This document shows, piece by piece, positions 26,585 to 42,829 of a stretch of 64,000 nt of DNA. A model generated the notes under the pieces. That model was given only the letters and a program-made list of their open reading frames with translations. It was not told the DNA's origin and made no database searches. The stretch is taken from positions 124,001 through 188,000 of the IMG/VR virus record IMGVR_UViG_3300030503_000315, one strand, 5' to 3'. Position 1 is the stretch's first letter. Each line of letters opens with the position of its first letter. Made by a program: the position numbers and the translations under genes.

Positions 26585-26690
26585 GAATGCCGGTTCATGT
26601 AGACGTTGAAAGCGATGGTGATAGTAGATCGGATGTGAACGCCGGGTCGATCCGGAAAGGTGGGTTCGACTCCCACAATCCATCGTGACA
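26585..26690 (+). ncRNA. Candidate tRNA-like (T-loop) structured RNA
   Basis: Perfect T-arm GTGGG-TTCGACT-CCCAC at 26660-26676, closing helix CGATGG/CCATCG, intergenic between two AGTAAATA motifs; no CCA or canonical anticodon loop. Confidence 0.5.
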
Positions 26691-26850
26691 AAAATTCGTG
26701 GTTCTCTGGATTTTCCAGAATAGTAAATAGTGTGGTAGGGCAGGATGTTGTAGAGGGAAGTATCATGTCTTGTCCGTACAGATTTTTCAAGTAGCACTGG
26801 TGTAACCTTGTTGGTATCATTCACGCAACGACACTACAGAGGGAACTGAA

Positions 26851-36015: not shown

Positions 36016-36793
36016 AGCTAGACATCGTTGATGCGTTGAACAGGATAGAGCAGTACAGACAGTTGAATCGCCCGGAACTAGAGGATCTTGAGTTTTACCA
36101 TGATGGGGCGAAGATTGAAATTCCGCCAAACCAATTGCGGGAATTTATATTCCTCGGTTTGAACAACACGGATTTTATCCGATGGTATTTTGGCAAGGAA
36201 GAGTTCTTTACTTCTCTTATGATCTACAAGAAAGGTGAAGATCAACCGGGTGATGAATCTATTGATAGCTGGATGGAGAAGAAGCATGGCGGAAAGAATG
36301 GAGATGGTGGTGAAGATGCAAGTCACAGAAGCACAGGGGCTAGCACTTCAAGCAATGTTCAAGACGTGGAATAGCTTAGCTTCGATGGGATGTTCCCGAA
36401 TGGTAGCGTTCTATGTTGATGGTGATGGAAATTTCAAACCGAAGTGTGAGGTGTCGTTTTCAGAACCGGTGCAGGATCTTACACCTGAATTAGAGAAGGC
36501 CGCCATGGTTATGAGTGAGAACGATAACCCAAGGCGTGATATTCAATTTGACTTTGATCCTATTGCGTGGAATATAAACAAGGGAAAGTAATGTGGATCC
36601 TCATTGTGACAATGATGTTCGATACCTCCGGTCCTCGTCCAGACGTGAGGTTTCAGGAATTCAGTACAGAGCAGTCTTGTAAGGACGCAGCGAATTGGAT
36701 TGCTACGGATATGAAGTACGAGATTTCGAATTCTAGTTACGCCAGTAGCAGCAATGTGCAATTTCACGTTCAGTGCAAAAAGAAATAGAAGAC

Positions 36794-36869
36794 GGTGAGA
36801 TAGCTCAGTTGGTAGAGCACCGTGTTGATAACGCGGTGGTCGCAGGTTCGAGCCCTGCTCTCACTACCA
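36794..36869 (+). tRNA. tRNA-Ile(GAT)
   Basis: Full cloverleaf, anticodon loop TT GAT AA, encoded CCA. Confidence 0.95.
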
Positions 36870-36884
36870 GTTTTATGTTTTATA

Positions 36885-36961
36885 GGGACCGTAGCTCAGT
36901 GTGATAGAGTAGTGGCCTACGAAGCCATTGGTCGGGGGTTCGAATCCCTCCGGTCCCACCA
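36885..36961 (+). tRNA. tRNA-Arg(ACG)
   Basis: Full cloverleaf, loop CT ACG AA, encoded CCA. Confidence 0.95.
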
Positions 36962-37083
36962 AATGTGCAGTTTCCGGATTCTGCCAAGTGTTGATAAAGA
37001 ACACATAAACAACACCGGTTTGATTTAAGGAGATAAGATGAAAAAGATGAGCATGTATGTAACCTCCCGATCGGATAAGATCA

Positions 37084-37548
37084 ATGGAGGTTCGAATGTC
37101 CAGAACAAAACGTTGCAAAAACTATGTCGTGGAAAACAATACGACCTGGGATCGACGGGGTAAGAAGGTAGCTTTGGAGTATACGGAAGACGATACACCG
37201 TACGAAGAAACAGGGCGCATGGTCCAGACTACCTTTTACGAAATGGTGATGAGAGGTGGAGTCACCGATTGGGTTCCCAAGGTTGGACCGAAAAGGCCGG
37301 AACGTGTTGCCCGGACGATCGAGTATCGTCCAATGGATAAGGGTGAACGTTGGTGGAAGGATCGCATGATGCATGGCGAATCTTCAACTGCTAACTCTCG
37401 TTCTCCTAGTCATTGGCATCGTCTCAACCGTCAGAAGCAAAACCGTTCGATCAACAAGCAAGAGATGTTGAAGTGGCTTAAAGCGAACGGTGAGTACGAA
37501 CCCATGTTCGAAGATAATCCCCGTGATTGTTGGTGGGATTGGTCCTGA
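37084..37548 (+). CDS. Basic hypothetical protein
   Basis: MSRT... start, Arg/Trp-rich C-terminus. Confidence 0.7.
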   Translation: MEVRMSRTKRCKNYVVENNTTWDRRGKKVALEYTEDDTPYEETGRMVQTTFYEMVMRGGVTDWVPKVGPKRPERVARTIEYRPMDKGERWWKDRMMHGESSTANSRSPSHWHRLNRQKQNRSINKQEMLKWLKANGEYEPMFEDNPRDCWWDWS

Positions 37549-37602
37549 AAATAAGGAGGCTATCATGAGTACAATCTAATCTCTAAAGAAAGGAGATGTA
37601 CT

Positions 37603-37914
37603 ATGAAAGCAAAAGCGTTTCACCACAAGGTAATAAGCTATGGTCCGGGCGGGTACAAGTGCCCGTGCTGCGGACCACACCCAAAGAAGCGTCAGGAAGA
37701 AAGACGCTTCTTGCGTCGTGCCTTCAATCGTGTCCTGGACGACATTGAGAAGGACGACGAAAGCAATATTGATTGGTATATGTTCCCGGAGTTCGATCAA
37801 CATAACTTGTGGATCGAGGCAGAAGAGAACTATTACCAATGGCTCTTGAAAGAAGGCCTTCTCGAAGACGTGTGGTGGTACAAAGAATGGTTGAAGCAGC
37901 AAGAAGAGAAGTGA
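37603..37914 (+). CDS. Small basic protein with GPGGxxCPCC motif
   Basis: AGGAG SD; YGPGGYKCPCCGP followed by Arg-rich helix. Confidence 0.75.
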   Translation: MKAKAFHHKVISYGPGGYKCPCCGPHPKKRQEERRFLRRAFNRVLDDIEKDDESNIDWYMFPEFDQHNLWIEAEENYYQWLLKEGLLEDVWWYKEWLKQQEEK

Positions 37915-37918
37915 ACGC

Positions 37919-38170
37919 CTTCCCTCCATCAATCTGTGTGGAAATCTCGGCCAGAGCGGGTTGGTGTCAGGGAAACTCCAAAGTTGACGAGCGTTAAGGA
38001 AGGACGCGCCTGATTCCTCGGTCAGGCAAGTAGCGCTGAGAGGTCCACTCGCGCTAAATCGTCAACAGCTCAACGCTGGGTGGTTACAGCCCTCCCTCTG
38101 TTGGCCCAGTGTACAGCCTGCGCTATCTACCCCCCATCAAGATTAGGTAGCGTGGGCTGTACATTTCTTT
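37919..38170 (+). ncRNA. Candidate structured ncRNA ending in terminator hairpin
   Basis: At least six helices, including a four-way junction closed by GTTGACGA/TCGTCAAC and a long terminal hairpin 38110-38163 plus T tract. Confidence 0.6.
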
Positions 38171-38223
38171 TCCATAAGAAACAGTAAATATGTGTTGTTG
38201 TTCAACTTCATAAAGGACGTAGA

Positions 38224-38595
38224 ATGAATGCCAAGCAGGTGAAGAAGATTCGCAAAGACCTCTTCAAGGAAGGTATCGACATTGCGAGTATTGTGTACTG
38301 CCAAATCGGCGGTAAGGTTTCGCAAGGTCGCATGATGTACCAGAAGGCAAAGAAAGATGCCAAGGCCTCGCCGACTATACTATCGCCGTATGCTCCTTCT
38401 CACGGTGTTGGTGTTCCTTCGGAAGGTAAGGCCTCGAAGTTCAAGGGTTTCACGAAGAAGGGTGAGAAGTGGCGCGATAACTACGGCGACACTCACCTAA
38501 TGTACGAGGAACGTCCTTACCGCCGCCTTGTCCGCGAACTCGAAGAATCGCAACGTGTAGCTAATAAGGCATTCTTGCCTAAGCAAGGAGACTAA
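38224..38595 (+). CDS. Basic hypothetical protein
   Basis: 123 aa, downstream of AGTAAATA motif. Confidence 0.7.
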   Translation: MNAKQVKKIRKDLFKEGIDIASIVYCQIGGKVSQGRMMYQKAKKDAKASPTILSPYAPSHGVGVPSEGKASKFKGFTKKGEKWRDNYGDTHLMYEERPYRRLVRELEESQRVANKAFLPKQGD

Positions 38596-38596
38596 G

Positions 38597-38965
38597 ATGC
38601 CCATTATCGCACTGTATGACAACGTAATTATTCGTCGGATAGAATCCCCGAACACGACTGCGTCTGGTCTTATCATTTCTTCTACGTCATCCCCGGATCA
38701 ATGGACAGGTGAAGTAGTTGCAACTGGTGAAGGAAAGATCCTTCAGGACGGATGTTTGTTCCCTCTAACCGTCAAAGAAGGTGATAAGGTTATCATCAGC
38801 ACTAAGTCAGAGTACCGTGCTCCTATATCGGTCGACGGTGAAGAACTTTACGCGTTCAAGGAACATGAACTAGTTGGTATCATCTATCCATATGGAACGG
38901 AATTGAATAATAGTTTCGGGATCGATGAAGAACTGGAAGACGAAGGGGAAGAGGAGGAAGAATGA
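38597..38965 (+). CDS. groES: GroES/Cpn10 co-chaperonin
   Basis: LYDNVIIRR...TASGLII...GEVVATGEG...PLTVKEGDKV. Confidence 0.85.
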   Translation: MPIIALYDNVIIRRIESPNTTASGLIISSTSSPDQWTGEVVATGEGKILQDGCLFPLTVKEGDKVIISTKSEYRAPISVDGEELYAFKEHELVGIIYPYGTELNNSFGIDEELEDEGEEEEE

Positions 38966-39187
38966 CTACTACACAGGTAGTTTGTGATCTGCTAGAAATT
39001 CGTCGATCGCTGTTTATGTGGAAGATGAACCTGGCAGCTGTGGATCGTTTGCTTCGTCACGTCGACTACGATACGACTACACTAGAGCAATACGACTTCA
39101 GCAAAGTCAACTACGAAGGCCAATCTGCGGGTTATCAGCGGGTAATCAAAGTTGACTTACTTGCTTTGTTGACCAAGTAAGTAGTAA

Positions 39188-39263
39188 GGGCCGTTAGCTC
39201 ATTGGTTAAGAGCCGGGTACTCATAATACTCAGGTGAAGGTTCGATTCCTTCACGGCCCACCA
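39188..39263 (+). tRNA. tRNA with CAT anticodon, probably Ile2 (lysidine type)
   Basis: Cloverleaf, loop CT CAT AA; C4:G69 and C5:G68; G1:C72 excludes initiator. Confidence 0.85.
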
Positions 39264-40051
39264 ACGAAGGATTGCTATGCCTTGGATACAAGAACCCTAC
39301 GCTCCTCCTGCAACACAGAAAGTCATATTCAACACCTACGATATAGATCAAGCGAACGTTTGGATGAGAATAATCCAGATGCATATCTGTGATGAGAAGT
39401 TAAGGAATAAGCCAGGAACTTTCGAGTTCGGACATATAACGTTGCACGACGTCATCCTTGTCTCATGCTGTACGGATCAGGAACCTTCTTATTTGGTTTC
39501 CAGATCTCCCAAGACAGAGATTGAACTCGCGTTCATCCACTTCCCGGAAGAAAAGAAGGTTGAGAAGACAAACTTGCTGAGGTTGATCCATGAACCACGA
39601 TAGACATCCTGTTCTTGTTTGGATCGGTGCCTACGCGGTTTGCGTGGTCTTTGCCATAGTAATGATATTCATTCTTGCGGTCATCCGTGGAGATTTTCCT
39701 TTTAAGGATAGGAGGCAGATGAGTATTCTTGCAGGATTTGTATTCACGCCGGGTTTGAATGTTCTGTACGGTATAGCTTGCATCCCATATATGTTCCTGG
39801 CCTTTGACAAGAAGATCAAATCATGATCCCGGTAGAAATTCGATGGAACCATCGAAGGAATATAAACGGTTTGATCTGGGATGGGGAAATTCATACTCTA
39901 CCACTTATCGACCATTTCATCTCAATTGAAGATGATGGTATAACTAAGAGGTATATAGTAGTTGATGTTGAGCATCAGTTGAAGCATGTAGCATTGCACG
40001 AAGAACAGAACGTTTACATTTTTGTCAAATCTCATCCTTAGTAAAACCAAT

Positions 40052-40139
40052 GCCCGGGTGGCGAAAACTGGTAGACGCATCTGGCTTAAGATCAGACGGA
40101 TGAATATCCATGAGGGTTCAAGTCCCTCCTCGGGCACCA
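40052..40139 (+). tRNA. tRNA-Leu(TAA)
   Basis: Cloverleaf with long variable arm, loop CT TAA GA, CCA. Confidence 0.95.
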
Positions 40140-40161
40140 CCTTACCTAACAGGAATTTCAA

Positions 40162-40575
40162 ATGAGCCTTAGCCTTCATTCTCAAACAATCAACATGAAG
40201 CGAACCGAGTTGATCCGTATTCTTGAGACCAACCTGGAGAAACACGTAGAAGAGTATAAGGAGGCGGTCATCAATTACCGTAAGGCATTGATGGTTGACC
40301 TGACGGAAGCTCTTCGCCAGGCTCAAGATGAGTCGTTCAATCTTAAAAAGATAAAGGTGGATTTTGTTCACCCGCAGTCACATGAATCGGATTACACTCG
40401 TGTTCTGAAGATGATGCGCCTTTCGATTGACGACACTATCGAAATAGATAATCAAGCATACGACGCATACATCGAAGATGAATGGCAATGGAAGTCGCAA
40501 TTCCGTCTGATGAACTCAACCTACGCAACTAAGGCTGCAGTGTTTGAGTCAAGCGTAGGTGGAATGATTGAGTAA
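40162..40575 (+). CDS. Conserved helical phage hypothetical protein
   Basis: N..KH..EY.EA...Y...P.SH..DY.R...M.......I.......Y..D.W.W pattern. Confidence 0.75.
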   Translation: MSLSLHSQTINMKRTELIRILETNLEKHVEEYKEAVINYRKALMVDLTEALRQAQDESFNLKKIKVDFVHPQSHESDYTRVLKMMRLSIDDTIEIDNQAYDAYIEDEWQWKSQFRLMNSTYATKAAVFESSVGGMIE

Positions 40576-40631
40576 GTAGCAAAAACATAATTATCATTTG
40601 TGACCCTTCGTTATACCTAATAGGAAAAATC

Positions 40632-41429
40632 ATGGCAAAGCTACATGAAGTGCTGGCATCGGAAAAGACAGTTACAGCCGCACGCGATCATCTGCATGAA
40701 GACACTCAGACAAAGTTTAAGAAAGCCGATCAATACTTTACAGGTATGATTAAATCCCTTAAGATGATCGAAGACTCTCCGGAAGCGGAGGCTATTGAAC
40801 AGGCAGCGAAGCAAGAGAAGGAACTCCCGACTACTCTAGTCACCACGATGGATTATTACCTTAGCTTCTGGGCTAAGGCAGAGAACCTCCTGTTTCAAAA
40901 GAACGTGACGAACACCCAAGCAGTGACCAGTCTATTATTCCGAGGCTCACTGGTTGCTGATAATGTTCCGGTTGATGAGTTGATGGGACTAGAAGTACGC
41001 ATTGGTGAATTGCGCAAACTAATTTTGGAAATGCCAACACTTGATGCTTCTAAGAATTGGGAGTTGGATTTGACTGCGCCGCAGGCTGGCACATGGAAAG
41101 CAACAAGCAATCAGGTAACGACCAAGACGGAGAAGGATGAAGTGACCGCAATTATTGTACCGGCAAATGATAAACATCCGGCACAGGTAAAGACGACCAT
41201 CAAAGACAAGGTAGTTGGTAAGTTCACATTGCAGACTTCGTCAGGCGCGACCACTGCAATTCAGAAGGCAAACATGATTGCTGCGATGGACGATTTCCTT
41301 ATCGAAGTCAAGACGGCTCGTACCCGGGCTAACTCTGTTGAGGTTGTTCCAGTTGACCCCATTGGGAATATCATCAAGGACATCCTCATGGCGTCACTGC
41401 TAGACGCACCCTCGAACAATCAGGTGTGA
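40632..41429 (+). CDS. Conserved hypothetical protein (recalled as DUF7873-like) directly upstream of large RNA
   Basis: MAKL..V.A.EK, VPV..L..LE, P.LD....W, A.DKHPAQV, SGA, VK.AR..AN..EV motifs. Confidence 0.7.
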   Translation: MAKLHEVLASEKTVTAARDHLHEDTQTKFKKADQYFTGMIKSLKMIEDSPEAEAIEQAAKQEKELPTTLVTTMDYYLSFWAKAENLLFQKNVTNTQAVTSLLFRGSLVADNVPVDELMGLEVRIGELRKLILEMPTLDASKNWELDLTAPQAGTWKATSNQVTTKTEKDEVTAIIVPANDKHPAQVKTTIKDKVVGKFTLQTSSGATTAIQKANMIAAMDDFLIEVKTARTRANSVEVVPVDPIGNIIKDILMASLLDAPSNNQV

Positions 41430-41430
41430 C

Positions 41431-41547
41431 ATGAACTGGCCGATGGCTTTTGCAATTGTTGGAGTAGTAGCTGCAGTGATGTTTGGCTCAGCAGCAAACG
41501 ATTATGTGGATAGCCCAAAGATAGCATGTACGCCGAATAGTAAATAA
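41431..41547 (+). CDS. Small membrane peptide
   Basis: 38 aa MNWPMAFAIVGVVAAVMFG... Confidence 0.5.
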   Translation: MNWPMAFAIVGVVAAVMFGSAANDYVDSPKIACTPNSK

Positions 41548-41625
41548 GTGTTGAAGGATTGTTGAAGGATTGTTGTAGCAAAACATACAGGAACAGGAAG
41601 CGTTATCATCCTCGTTAGCATCCTC

Positions 41626-41853
41626 GCCTTACGTTGGTTCGAATCCAGCCAGGCGCGCCAAGAGTTCTGCTGTATGTATACTTCATAAGATTGACATTAT
41701 CTGATTGAAGGAGAGGGCCGACGACTTCCGACAGCTCGCCCCTCATAATCCAGAAAACCTATTATGTTTCATAGCGAGTATGGAGTATGGTAGAATTCTT
41801 GACGCGCCTGTGACCCGAGAGGATAGGGCCCAGATTTCTAATCTGGTGTAGGC
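41626..41853 (+). tRNA. Circularly permuted tRNA-Arg(TCT)-like module: 3' part 41626-41660, 5' part 41804-41853
   Basis: T-arm + CAGGCGC-G-CCA upstream; GCGCCTG + D-arm + CCAGA-TTTCTAA-TCTGG downstream; acceptor strands perfectly complementary. Confidence 0.8.
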
Positions 41854-41955
41854 AATTATCGTTCTTGTATTACCTGTATGAGTTATCATAAGCAACTGCA
41901 GTATGAATCCCGTCGAGTTGCTGGCACACCCTACTGAATAGAGTGCCTAGCTAAA

Positions 41956-42519
41956 AATCAGAAGTCACGGGTTCGAATCCCGTCTCCGCCTCACTGTGTA
42001 TTATGGTATGACAAGAAAAGAGAAACGAAACTTTATCCGAGCCAATATCCAGAAAATTGGTGAATGCTGGATCTGGCAATTGAAGACGGATAGAGATGGT
42101 TACGGTTGGTATTCCTACAAAGGAAAATTGCGCCGGGCTCATAGATCCTCGTTTCACGCTTTCAAGGGAAAGATTCCAAAAGGTCTTTCTGTCTGTCATA
42201 CCTGCGACAATCCAAGCTGTGTGAGACCAAAACATCTGTTTGCGGGTACTCACAAACAAAACATGGAAGACATGGCAAAGAAGGGAAGATCTAATAAAGG
42301 CCGCCATGTTAATACCGGAGAGGCTCACGGTTATTCCGTTCTGACTGAAGAACTAGTTCTGTACATAAGAAAGGTATGTGCGGGAGGTAAATCACAGAAC
42401 TCTGTTGAAAGAGAACTTGGTTTATCCTCTGGACTTGTTAACAAGGTGGTCAGAAGAAAGCTTTGGACGCACATTTAGTATACAGTGAGGCGGAGTATCT
42501 CAGTGGTAGAGGTCTGATT
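41956..42519 (+). tRNA. Circularly permuted Cys-like tRNA module split at the anticodon loop: 3' half 41956-41993, 5' half 42489-42519
   Basis: AA-TCAGA-AGTC-ACGGG-TTCGAAT-CCCGT-CTCCGCC-T upstream; GGCGGAG-TA-TCTC-AGTGGTA-GAGG-TCTGA-TT downstream. Confidence 0.75.
42008..42478 (+). CDS. HNH homing endonuclease
   Basis: CWIW...GYG...AHR....F...IP.GL.VCHTCDNP.CVRP.HL..GT...N..D; C-terminal HTH-like segment. Confidence 0.93.
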   Translation: MTRKEKRNFIRANIQKIGECWIWQLKTDRDGYGWYSYKGKLRRAHRSSFHAFKGKIPKGLSVCHTCDNPSCVRPKHLFAGTHKQNMEDMAKKGRSNKGRHVNTGEAHGYSVLTEELVLYIRKVCAGGKSQNSVERELGLSSGLVNKVVRRKLWTHI

Positions 42520-42664
42520 CTATTCCTTATCGTAACTAACTCGAATGTGGTGGAAAGTGTGGTTGGGATTAATATCCAAAGTTCCAGGCAGGAGTCGGAT
42601 AAGACAAATGTTCTGGAACTTCCTAAAGAGTTTTCCACGAGAGCTCTTTAGAAAGACAAACAAG

Positions 42665-42695
42665 AAGGCTACCAATTTCGGTTGGTAGCCTTTTT
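42665..42695 (+). terminator. Intrinsic terminator
   Basis: AAGGCTACCAA/TTGGTAGCCTT stem plus T tract. Confidence 0.85.
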
Positions 42696-42829
42696 CTATC
42701 TTCGCCTACAGGGTTTTGAGCAAATTTCATGGGGATTGTGTCGAGGACACGACACTGAAACCTAAGGAGCTTTCCATGGCGTTACTCACACGTCTTTGCT
42801 CAACCTTGCTCACCCTGTACAGGAAGATC

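What the first reader, a model, noticed from the sequence alone, without database searches (positions are those of the whole stretch)
41984..42495. HNH endonuclease ORF exactly looped out by a 20 bp extended acceptor stem
Seen: CTCCGCCTCACTGTGTATTA (41984-42003) pairs fully (two G:U) with TAGTATACAGTGAGGCGGAG (42476-42495). The HNH ATG (42008) lies just inside the helix and its stop codon (42476-42478) is part of it. Established: homing endonuclease ORFs insert into peripheral loops of self-splicing introns, where they do no harm. Inference: this loop is a dispensable/excised segment of a functional RNA, the HNH may mobilise the RNA locus, and its translation start may be exposed only after tRNA-like processing.
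Basis: partly seen in the sequence, partly recalled or inferred. Interest (0 to 1): 0.7.

Follow-up and report, generated by a model that had tools for sequence, protein, structure and literature searches.

The report
Homing endonuclease inside a tRNA-like RNA
The 20-bp helix is real: it is the acceptor-type stem of a circularly permuted, tRNA-shaped non-coding RNA that many phages carry next to one unknown gene, and a mobile HNH endonuclease gene has settled in its dispensable tip loop.

Summary
Bases 41984-42003 pair with 42476-42495 over 20 uninterrupted pairs (18 Watson-Crick, 2 G:U), and they bracket the HNH ORF 42008-42478.

- **What the helix is.** Its outer 7 bp form the acceptor stem of a permuted tRNA-like module: T arm and 3' acceptor strand lie upstream of the HNH gene, 5' acceptor strand and D arm downstream. 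The other 13 bp extend that stem.
- **A second module.** A similar module lies at 41633-41846, closed by a 147-nt hairpin.
- **Conservation.** The unit T arm, closed acceptor stem-loop, D arm follows DUF7873 genes in about 25 phage loci. These include cultured phages phiRSL1, Klebsiella FBKp24, Rhizobium TM30 and Vibrio D505. Covariation is very strong.
- **HNH-less relatives keep the stem.** phiRSL1 and FBKp24 have 7 bp plus 12-13 bp closed by a 3-4-nt loop. One relative (L006) carries a 62%-identical HNH at the same spot.
- **Closest known class.** YrlA-type bacterial Y RNAs. The Ro60 gene, the Ro60-binding motif and the Rfam threshold are all missing.

"Intron-like" is not supported. Processing and translational control are untested.

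The parts
40632..41429 (+). DUF7873 gene (265 aa), the conserved upstream neighbour of the RNA in all related loci
   Evidence: Pfam PF25283 E 1.6e-53. Homologs in about 30 metagenome loci and 75 phage records. AF2 model pLDDT 86.6 with no informative structural match.
41539..41632 (+). Leader 'X'. It holds the conserved AGTAAATAAG box (41539-41548, possibly a promoter; inference) and tandem repeats 41549-41575 (11 nt x2.5) and 41601-41626 (12 nt x2.2). Part of it pairs with 41855-41881 to close module A.
   Evidence: TRF, three-phage alignment, MFE fold, coordinates.
41633..41660 (+). Module A, 3' part: T arm GTTGG-TTCGAAT-CCAGC (41633-41649), acceptor 3' strand CAGGCGC (41650-41656), G73 and CCA (41657-41660).
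   Evidence: CM R1 partial hit 41621-41722, 17.1 bits.
41661..41803 (+). Module A acceptor-stem extension and long imperfect hairpin. The spacer between the acceptor strands is 147 nt, against 30-37 nt in phiRSL1, L006 and L007.
   Evidence: Inverted repeat I2, 41650-41668 with 41792-41810. Fold. No other copy in the genome.
41804..41846 (+). Module A, 5' part: acceptor 5' strand GCGCCTG (41804-41810), D arm (41813-41829), anticodon-like hairpin CCAGA-TTTCTAA-TCTGG (41830-41846).
   Evidence: The hairpin loop is not conserved in phiRSL1 or L006.
41847..41956 (+). Linker 'Y', with conserved motifs ATTATCGTTC (41855-41864) and GTATTACC (41867-41874). GAATAGA (41936-41942) pairs with 42519-42525.
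   Evidence: Alignment, pattern hits in phiRSL1. The only part of the locus seen in two soil metatranscriptomes is 41817/41832-41982.
41957..41990 (+). Module B, 3' half: closing-helix strand ATCAG (41957-41961), variable AAGTC, T arm ACGGG-TTCGAAT-CCCGT (41967-41983), acceptor 3' strand CTCCGCC (41984-41990).
   Evidence: CM R1 hit 41955-42013, 22.5 bits, E 1e-4. Rfam tRNA partial hit 41933-41983.
41991..42003 (+). 5' arm of the 13-bp extension of the acceptor stem (starts with T73, which pairs with A42488).
   Evidence: I1. Homologous 12-13-bp extensions in phiRSL1 and FBKp24.
42008..42478 (+). HNH homing endonuclease gene (156 aa) with a C-terminal helix-turn-helix. No Shine-Dalgarno sequence is visible upstream. 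It fills the whole apical loop.
   Evidence: Pfam HNH_3, PHROGs, 1511 phage records at about 40% identity. Ortholog at the same site in L006: 62% aa identity, dN 0.30, dS saturated, both intact.
42476..42525 (+). Module B, 5' half: 3' arm of the extension (42476-42488, includes the stop codon), acceptor 5' strand GGCGGAG (42489-42495), TA, D arm TCTC-AGTGGTA-GAGG (42498-42512), closing-helix strand (42513-42525).
42527..42696 (+). Trailer 'Z': conserved TTATCGTAACTA (42527-42538); covarying hairpin 42579-42621 holding AGGAG and the ATG (42608) of a 26-codon ORF (to 42688); hairpin followed by a T run at 42665-42696 (terminator-like).
   Evidence: Alignment, pattern hit in phiRSL1, inverted repeats I3 and I5, coordinates.

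Best explanation
The 20-bp helix is the 7-bp acceptor-type stem, plus a 13-bp coaxial extension, of 'module B'. Module B is a circularly permuted tRNA-like domain whose order along the RNA is closing helix, T arm, closed acceptor stem-loop, D arm, closing helix.

Module B and a sister module A (41633-41846) belong to one structured non-coding RNA locus that follows the DUF7873 gene. The locus is ancestral to phiRSL1-like and FBKp24-like jumbo phages. A one-module form is widespread in other phages.

The tip of the acceptor stem-loop is a free expansion site. In this phage and in one relative it is occupied by a free-standing HNH homing endonuclease gene. The pre-existing stem brings the two tRNA-like halves together across the 472-nt insert, so the RNA still folds.

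What is shown: the structure, its conservation and covariation, the HNH presence/absence polymorphism, and the HNH family.

What is inferred:
- As for Mycobacterium smegmatis YrlA and for two-piece tmRNA, RNase P and 3'-end or CCA enzymes cut at the acceptor ends. This would release the loop with the HNH message and leave base-paired RNA pieces that carry a tRNA-like end.
- HNH translation is probably limited to the time before the 3' arm is transcribed.
- The RNA acts as a tRNA mimic for a partner that is not yet known.
For: Anatomy.

Unbiased anchor test: only the T-arm and D-arm motifs were fixed. In 21 modules the 7-mers beside them are 7/7 complementary, while shifted controls give 0-5.

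Covariation on 15 modules: the acceptor stem is 100% paired, with double-sided changes at all 7 pairs. The T stem is 100% paired and the D stem 95%. None of 500 shuffles reached the observed values.

CM built from these modules: it finds unseen members in cultured phages (Rhizobium TM30 67.8 bits, Vibrio D505 61.5, Klebsiella FBKp24 61.1). It also finds the two halves of module B in the window.

HNH-less orthologs fold alone into the same cloverleaf, with the acceptor stem plus a 12-13-bp extension (z -5.5 and -6.1).

The loop between the acceptor strands is 10-147 nt without HNH and 493/498 nt with it.

N73-CCA is encoded after the acceptor 3' strand in 13 of 17 B-type or single modules, and in module A here.

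The Rfam YrlA model matches the phiRSL1 ortholog and other members, mostly over its whole length, at E 2e-5 to 2e-3. M. smegmatis YrlA is cut by RNase P and receives CCA (PMC4201824).

HNH.

RNA: across 6 kb, two soil metatranscriptomes hold only 41817/41832-41982. This lies inside the predicted middle fragment 41804-41991.
Against: - No processing site has been mapped. The RNA evidence consists of two low-depth contigs from metatranscriptomes, which may contain DNA.
- Module B here, and in phiRSL1 and L006, lacks an encoded CCA (TCAC, GCCT, TCCT).
- T73 pairs with the base before G1, which is not ideal for RNase P.
- The YrlA matches are far below Rfam's threshold (32-38 bits against 69).
- The function and the partner of the RNA are unknown.
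- The HNH has not been shown to cut anything.
Confidence: 0.7

Rival explanations
1. These are true circularly permuted tRNA genes, as in Cyanidioschyzon merolae. The transcript ends would be joined in the anticodon or variable loop, the acceptor loop (with the HNH gene) would be cut out, and functional tRNAs would result, for example Arg(UCU) from module A.
For: The 3' half lies upstream of the 5' half. ARAGORN calls a tRNA on joined halves. Module A has a canonical anticodon loop TT-TCT-AA, a D loop carrying the GG pair followed by an A at the place of position 20, G73 and CCA. CCA is widely conserved.
Against: For module B no junction gives a canonical loop; every 7-nt reading has C at position 33 (my reading). 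The anticodon-like loop of module A is not conserved in phiRSL1 or L006. In single-module loci the closing helix simply continues. No bulge-helix-bulge motif is present. No RtcB or Rnl2-type ligase is found in the 91%-complete genome (the Rnl1 search was uninformative). First acceptor bases vary freely among A, C, G and T.
Confidence: 0.08
2. After cutting at the acceptor ends, the pieces form an aminoacylatable split tRNA-like RNA. This would be a two-piece tmRNA-like or plant-virus TLS-like device that engages the translation apparatus or protects a 3' end.
For: The 7-bp acceptor stem and N73-CCA are conserved. The Rfam model of permuted beta-proteobacterial tmRNA matches the T-arm and acceptor hairpin. 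M. smegmatis YrlA gains CCA in vivo.
Against: There is no G3:U70, no tag reading frame, and ARAGORN finds no tmRNA. Acceptor sequences and discriminators vary, so no single synthetase identity is kept. Module B here has no CCA.
Confidence: 0.1
3. The HNH gene sits in a self-splicing intron or intron-like element, and the helix is an intron or P-type pairing that loops the ORF out.
For: Homing endonuclease ORFs in peripheral intron loops are a well-known arrangement (established knowledge).
Against: No Rfam intron family matches at E up to 10. The flanks are T arm plus acceptor and acceptor plus D arm, not exons of one gene. The stem exists in HNH-less orthologs with a 3-4-nt loop.
Confidence: 0.02
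4. The arms are terminal inverted repeats of the mobile HNH cassette, or a chance inverted repeat next to decayed tRNA fragments.
For: A helix of 20 bp or more arises somewhere in 2 of 10 shuffled genomes.
Against: The extension sequences differ between this phage, L006 and phiRSL1 yet stay paired. The arms are present without HNH. The permuted arrangement is conserved and covaries in more than 20 loci.
Confidence: 0.01

Closest known systems
YrlA-type bacterial Y RNAs (Rfam RF02553; Chen et al. 2014, PMC4201824)
   Same: Both have a tRNA-like module in the order T arm, closed acceptor-like stem-loop, D arm, entered and left through a long helix made by the 5' and 3' flanks. The tRNA tertiary-contact nucleotides are conserved. 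One member (M. smegmatis) has a 7-bp stem that is cut by RNase P and receives CCA. Some members are phage-encoded.
   Different: No Ro60/TROVE gene occurs in this phage, phiRSL1 or the L006 contig. The Ro60-binding motif GNCGAAN0-1G is absent. Scores are 32-38 bits against a gathering score of 69. The element is linked to DUF7873 and to tRNA clusters. Two modules occur in tandem in the jumbo phages, and in module A the closing helix sits at the variable-arm position. CCA is encoded, and the acceptor-like stem-loop carries a protein gene.
Circularly permuted tRNA genes (Cyanidioschyzon merolae and other algae, Thermofilum; Soma et al. 2007, from my own knowledge)
   Same: The 3' half is encoded upstream of the 5' half, and the acceptor ends are linked by an intervening sequence that must be removed by RNase P and a 3' nuclease.
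   Different: Those genes have a bulge-helix-bulge junction cut by the splicing endonuclease and sealed by a ligase to give a normal tRNA. Here there is no such motif, no reconstitutable anticodon loop in module B, and the element is a bacteriophage one.
Two-piece (permuted) tmRNA of alpha- and beta-proteobacteria and cyanobacteria
   Same: The gene is permuted: T arm, acceptor 3' strand and CCA, then an excised loop, then the acceptor 5' strand. The mature RNA stays in pieces held by base pairing. The Rfam beta_tmRNA model matches this part.
   Different: There is no G3:U70, no tag ORF and no pseudoknots. A canonical D arm is present.
Homing endonuclease ORFs in loops of group I introns (e.g. 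I-TevI in T4 td, HNH I-HmuI in SPO1), and the free-standing SegB in the T4 tRNA cluster (from my own knowledge)
   Same: A mobile endonuclease gene is parked where it does not disturb a functional RNA or gene, bracketed by RNA pairing, and has weak translation signals. SegB shows that homing endonuclease genes colonise phage tRNA regions.
   Different: The host RNA here is not a ribozyme and nothing is spliced. Harmlessness comes from an expandable hairpin tip and possibly from tRNA-type end processing.

Membership tests
YrlA / bacterial Y RNA | tRNA-like module in the order T arm, acceptor-like stem-loop, D arm, closed by a helix made of the flanks | tested here: met
YrlA / bacterial Y RNA | Score at or above the Rfam RF02553 gathering threshold (69 bits) | tested here: not met
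   No hit in the window. Orthologs and relatives score 32-38 bits.
YrlA / bacterial Y RNA | Ro60-binding helix with the GNCGAAN0-1G motif | tested here: not met
   The motif is absent from the window and phiRSL1. It is present in 4 of 17 loci, at inconsistent places.
YrlA / bacterial Y RNA | Encoded next to a Ro60 (TROVE) gene, or bound by Ro60 | tested here: not met
   No TROVE in the own genome, phiRSL1 or the L006 contig. Host Ro60 and actual binding cannot be tested here.
Circularly permuted tRNA gene | 3' half upstream of the 5' half, with complementary 7-bp acceptor strands | tested here: met
Circularly permuted tRNA gene | A junction that restores a canonical anticodon or variable loop (bulge-helix-bulge or another cut-and-ligate signal) | tested here: not met
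   Module B gives only loops with C33. The closing helix continues in relatives. No RNA ligase was found.
Circularly permuted tRNA gene | Mature contiguous tRNA detected | not testable with these tools
   Only metatranscriptome contigs were available, and no joints were reported.
Group I/II intron carrying a homing endonuclease ORF | Conserved intron core and flanking exons | tested here: not met
   No intron family at E up to 10. The flanks are tRNA-like arms.
Two-piece tmRNA | G3:U70 alanine identity, tag ORF, ARAGORN or Rfam tmRNA call | tested here: not met
   Acceptor 3:70 is C:G. ARAGORN with the tmRNA option finds none. Only the tRNA-like hairpin part matches beta_tmRNA in relatives.
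HNH homing endonuclease (free-standing) | HNH catalytic motif and family membership | tested here: met
   PF13392 E 5.8e-12, phrog_1872 E 7e-32.
HNH homing endonuclease (free-standing) | Presence/absence polymorphism at one site among related genomes | tested here: met
   Present here and in L006, absent in phiRSL1 and FBKp24 at the same hairpin tip.
HNH homing endonuclease (free-standing) | Cleaves the endonuclease-less allele and is copied into it | not testable with these tools
   Needs enzyme assays or co-infection experiments.

The most novel reading that the evidence does not exclude
The DUF7873-linked element is a previously undescribed, widespread phage ribonucleoprotein system. Permuted tRNA-like RNAs would be cut by the host's tRNA-maturation enzymes into base-paired pieces with a true N73-CCA end. 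They would work without Ro60, possibly with DUF7873 bound to the 6-nt-periodic leader, as a charged or chargeable split tRNA mimic or as a decoy for tRNA-directed host factors. The acceptor-loop excision pathway would then double as the way an embedded homing endonuclease message is released.
Probability: 0.2. Interest if true: 0.85.

Novelty: new variant of a known kind. Interest (0 to 1): 0.65.

Why it matters
The finding points to a conserved family of tRNA-shaped RNAs that annotation pipelines do not detect. In phiRSL1 the locus is an unannotated gap. In FBKp24 part of it is called a suppressor tRNA. The family is present in cultured Klebsiella, Ralstonia, Rhizobium and Vibrio phages, so it can be studied at the bench.

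It extends the Y-RNA-like tRNA mimics to phages that have no Ro60, which raises the question of what these mimics bind.

It also shows a new kind of safe harbour for a homing endonuclease gene: the expandable tip of a tRNA-like acceptor hairpin rather than an intron or an intergenic spacer. If tRNA-type processing releases the loop, RNA maturation and endonuclease expression would be coupled.

Tried and rejected
- **Group I/II intron, riboswitch or other known RNA.** Rfam at E up to 10 gave nothing in 41500-42700 except a partial tRNA hit.
- **True permuted tRNA.** ARAGORN accepts joined halves at almost any junction, so it cannot place the junction. No canonical loop can be made for module B.
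- **Phage RNA ligases or Ro60.** RtcB, Rnl2-type and TROVE are absent. The Rnl1 search had no working control.
- **Function of DUF7873.** There was no PHROG. Foldseek PDB hits all had E above 0.01 and TM about 0.1; the many weak Cas7 rows are not significant. VIA-align gave Z of 6.6 or less on helical proteins. AFDB and ESM Atlas returned only unnamed DUF7873 clusters. No paper mentions DUF7873.
- **Protein-RNA complex prediction.** The job was not folded by the tool and is not evidence either way.
- **Genome-contig scan for DUF7873.** No confirmed hit.
- **Search for an HNH-less allele of this same phage in metagenome runs.** The contigs were too fragmentary to tell.
- **Literature.** Searches for permuted tRNAs in phages and for tRNA-like RNAs in jumbo phages found no description of this element.
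- **Pairing of the HNH start region with 41862-41874** (I8). It is not conserved in L006 and is treated as chance.

Full report
**Observation.** Bases 41984-42003 and 42476-42495 form 20 uninterrupted pairs, 18 Watson-Crick and 2 G:U. This is the strongest inverted repeat of the region. It is one of only three uninterrupted helices of 20 bp or more, spanning up to 1.2 kb, in the 215-kb genome. Markov shuffles of the genome produced such a helix in 2 of 10 runs. The ORF between the arms runs from ATG 42008 (or an in-frame GTG at 41996) to TAG 42476-42478. It is an HNH endonuclease: Pfam HNH_3 at E 5.8e-12 and PHROG endonuclease families down to E 7e-32. The description is therefore correct at the stated coordinates.

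**What the helix belongs to.** Immediately 5' of the helix lies a canonical T arm, ACGGG-TTCGAAT-CCCGT (41967-41983). Immediately 3' lies TA followed by a canonical D arm, TCTC-AGTGGTA-GAGG (42498-42512).
- The outer 7 bp of the helix (CTCCGCC with GGCGGAG) are thus an acceptor stem whose 3' strand is encoded before its 5' strand.
- The remaining 13 bp extend that stem.
- Beyond the T arm and the D arm, ATCAG(A) 41957-41962 pairs with (T)CTGAT 42513-42518. This closes the domain where a tRNA would have its anticodon stem.
- A second unit of the same kind (module A) lies upstream. It has a T arm at 41633-41649; the strand CAGGCGC followed by GCCA; a 147-nt spacer that folds into a long imperfect hairpin; then GCGCCTG, a D arm and a 17-nt hairpin (41804-41846).
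- ARAGORN and Rfam see only the four ordinary tRNAs of the window.

**Relatives.** The gene upstream (40632-41429) is a DUF7873 protein. Searching for its homologs brought in phiRSL1, two other viral contigs and 31 metagenome loci, and later cultured Klebsiella, Rhizobium, Vibrio and Gordonia phages.
- Nearly every locus with enough flank has the same unit downstream of DUF7873, often within a tRNA cluster: T arm, 7-nt strand, mostly N-CCA, a loop, the complementary 7-nt strand, then a D arm of the TAGCTCAGTGGTAGAGC type.
- In a test anchored only on the T-arm and D-arm motifs, the adjoining 7-mers were 7/7 complementary in 21 modules. Windows shifted by 1-3 nt gave 0-5.
- On an alignment of 15 modules, the acceptor stem is 100% paired with double-sided changes at all seven positions. 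The T stem is 100% paired and the D stem 95%. No shuffle out of 500 reaches these values, and slid controls drop to 31-51% paired.
- A covariance model built from these 15 finds members it had not seen in Rhizobium phage TM30 (67.8 bits), Vibrio phage D505 (61.5), Klebsiella phage FBKp24 (61.1), L028 and L034. It finds the A-type modules of L006, L007 and FBKp24 more weakly. In the window it finds the two separated halves of module B and the start of module A.
- Its one strong false positive is the junction of two adjacent ordinary tRNAs (36830-36918). This is a known pitfall for this architecture.

**The HNH-less allele and the stem.** phiRSL1 has the orthologous two-module locus in an unannotated gap between ORF270 (DUF7873) and ORF269.
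- Its module B folds on its own into the same cloverleaf: a 7-bp acceptor stem, a bulged G73 and a 13-bp extension closed by a 4-nt loop (z -5.5).
- FBKp24's module B has 7 bp plus a 12-bp extension closed by a 3-nt loop (z -6.1).
- L006, a phiRSL1-like contig, has an HNH gene at exactly the same tip. It is 62% identical in protein, with dN 0.30, saturated synonymous change and both reading frames intact. It is flanked by a different but still pairing extension.
- Across all modules the spacer between the acceptor strands is 10-147 nt without HNH and 493 or 498 nt with it.
- The stem therefore predates the insertion, is kept with or without HNH, and covaries.
- The endonuclease belongs to a family found in more than 1500 phage records at about 40% identity, at many different loci, often annotated as homing endonuclease.

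**What kind of RNA this is.** The order T arm, closed acceptor-like stem-loop, D arm, entered through a long helix formed by the flanks, is the architecture described for YrlA-type bacterial Y RNAs (PMC4201824).
- The Rfam YrlA model matches the phiRSL1 ortholog of module B and several single-module loci over its full length, and FBKp24 over its central part. Scores are only 32-38 bits (E 2e-5 to 2e-3) against a threshold of 69.
- The other defining YrlA features fail. There is no TROVE/Ro60 gene in this genome, in complete phiRSL1 or in the L006 contig. The Ro60-binding motif GNCGAAN0-1G is not conserved.
- I therefore file the element as working like a YrlA-type tRNA mimic, but not as a member of that family.
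- A true permuted tRNA gene is unlikely. Module B cannot yield a canonical anticodon loop. The hairpin loop of module A (TTTCTAA here) is not conserved in phiRSL1 or L006. The closing helix simply continues in single-module loci. First acceptor bases vary freely. No RtcB or Rnl2-type ligase is encoded.
- tmRNA features and intron features are absent.

**How it most likely works.** The shown parts are the conserved fold and the insertion polymorphism. The rest is inference.
- A 7-bp acceptor stem stacked on a T arm and followed by N73-CCA is encoded in 13 of 17 single or B-type modules and in module A here. That is the determinant set for RNase P and for 3'-end and CCA maintenance.
- M. smegmatis YrlA, the one YrlA with a 7-bp stem, is cut by RNase P in vitro and in vivo, receives CCA, and persists as two halves.
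- By analogy, cutting at 41991 and at 42488/42489 would release the loop, here a 0.5-kb RNA carrying the HNH message. It would leave base-paired pieces. With two modules, the middle piece would be 41804-41991.
- Two independent soil metatranscriptomes contain exactly one piece of this phage within a 6-kb test region: 41832-41982 and 41817-41982. There is nothing from DUF7873, the HNH gene or the phage's ordinary tRNAs. This fits the model but is thin: depth is about 5, the data are contigs only, and DNA carry-over cannot be excluded.
- On translation, no Shine-Dalgarno sequence precedes the ATG, and positions -24 to -5 are in the helix. Excision at the acceptor ends would leave the 13-bp extension intact, so processing would not by itself free the start. 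Initiation before the 3' arm is transcribed is the simpler idea. Both are untested.

**Function of the RNA.** This remains open. DUF7873 gave a confident model (pLDDT 86.6) but no informative structural or sequence relative. Its constant position beside the RNA and inside tRNA clusters suggests a link. So do the short tandem repeats, often with a 6-nt period, in the leader between the gene and the module. None of this proves one.

**Verdict.** The finding is real. It is better described as a homing endonuclease gene nested in the expandable acceptor-hairpin tip of a conserved, permuted tRNA-like phage RNA. Relative to known systems it is a new variant of the YrlA-type tRNA mimic: no Ro60, linked to DUF7873, often in tandem, with CCA encoded. 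It is also a new kind of harbour for a homing endonuclease gene.

Noticed in passing
window 41549-41575 and 41601-41626; L030 5801-5835; leaders of L016, L017, L020, L029, phiRSL1 (L002 1420-1450): The leader between the DUF7873 stop codon and the first T arm carries short tandem repeats. In many relatives these have a 6-nt period (for example CTCAAG-like x7 in L030, GCGTTA-like x4 in phiRSL1, AAACTG x3 in L029). They are often bracketed by GGG...CCC. This could be a periodic protein-binding platform. The unit sequence differs between phages.
   Followed up: partly
window 41855-41874 and 42527-42538; L002 1569-1578 and 1775-1785: A TTATCGT-type motif follows each tRNA-like module at a similar distance (ATTATCGTTC..GTATTACC after A, TTATCGTAACTA after B). 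It is conserved in phiRSL1 and L006, and similar ATCGT motifs recur in the leaders of L012, L018 and L025.
   Followed up: partly
L002 2134-2257 (phiRSL1, between ORF269 and ORF268): A tRNA-like gene with a 62-nt insert in the anticodon loop (Rfam tRNA 41.3 bits). It is not annotated in the record. It could be an intron-containing or disrupted tRNA.
   Followed up: no
L039 2518-2597 (Klebsiella phage FBKp24): The record annotates a 'tRNA-Sup-TTA' whose 3' part is the T arm and acceptor strand of permuted module B (2570-2597). This is probably a mis-call caused by the permuted element.
   Followed up: partly
window 41817-41982: Two soil metatranscriptome runs from different studies (2017 and 2025) each hold one contig of this segment (100% and 99.4% identical; T41866G in one). 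Both end at 41982, inside the T arm of module B. No other part of 36700-42800 from this phage is present.
   Followed up: yes
window 42579-42688: A covarying hairpin (also in phiRSL1 and L006) encloses AGGAG and the ATG (42608) of a 26-codon ORF. In phiRSL1 the same hairpin holds the ribosome-binding site and start of ORF269 (81 aa). Translation of the downstream small gene may be structure-controlled.
   Followed up: no
window 26648-26712: An isolated canonical T arm (GTGGG-TTCGACT-CCCAC) with no detectable acceptor partner. The covariance model gives a weak hit (14.7 bits, E 0.03). It may be a decayed tRNA or tRNA-like fragment.
   Followed up: no
L042 2536-2612 and 2683-2789 (Gordonia phage Keelan): Two covariance-model hits (37 and 43 bits) for the permuted module. 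Most of this stretch lies under the region annotated as protein gene 126 (locus 2546-2791), downstream of the DUF7873 homolog and a tRNA-Thr. That CDS call may be spurious.
   Followed up: no
L039-L042, L016, L020: DUF7873 genes sit inside or next to phage tRNA clusters in unrelated phages (Klebsiella, Rhizobium, Vibrio, Gordonia). An ordinary tRNA sometimes lies between the gene and the permuted module.
   Followed up: partly
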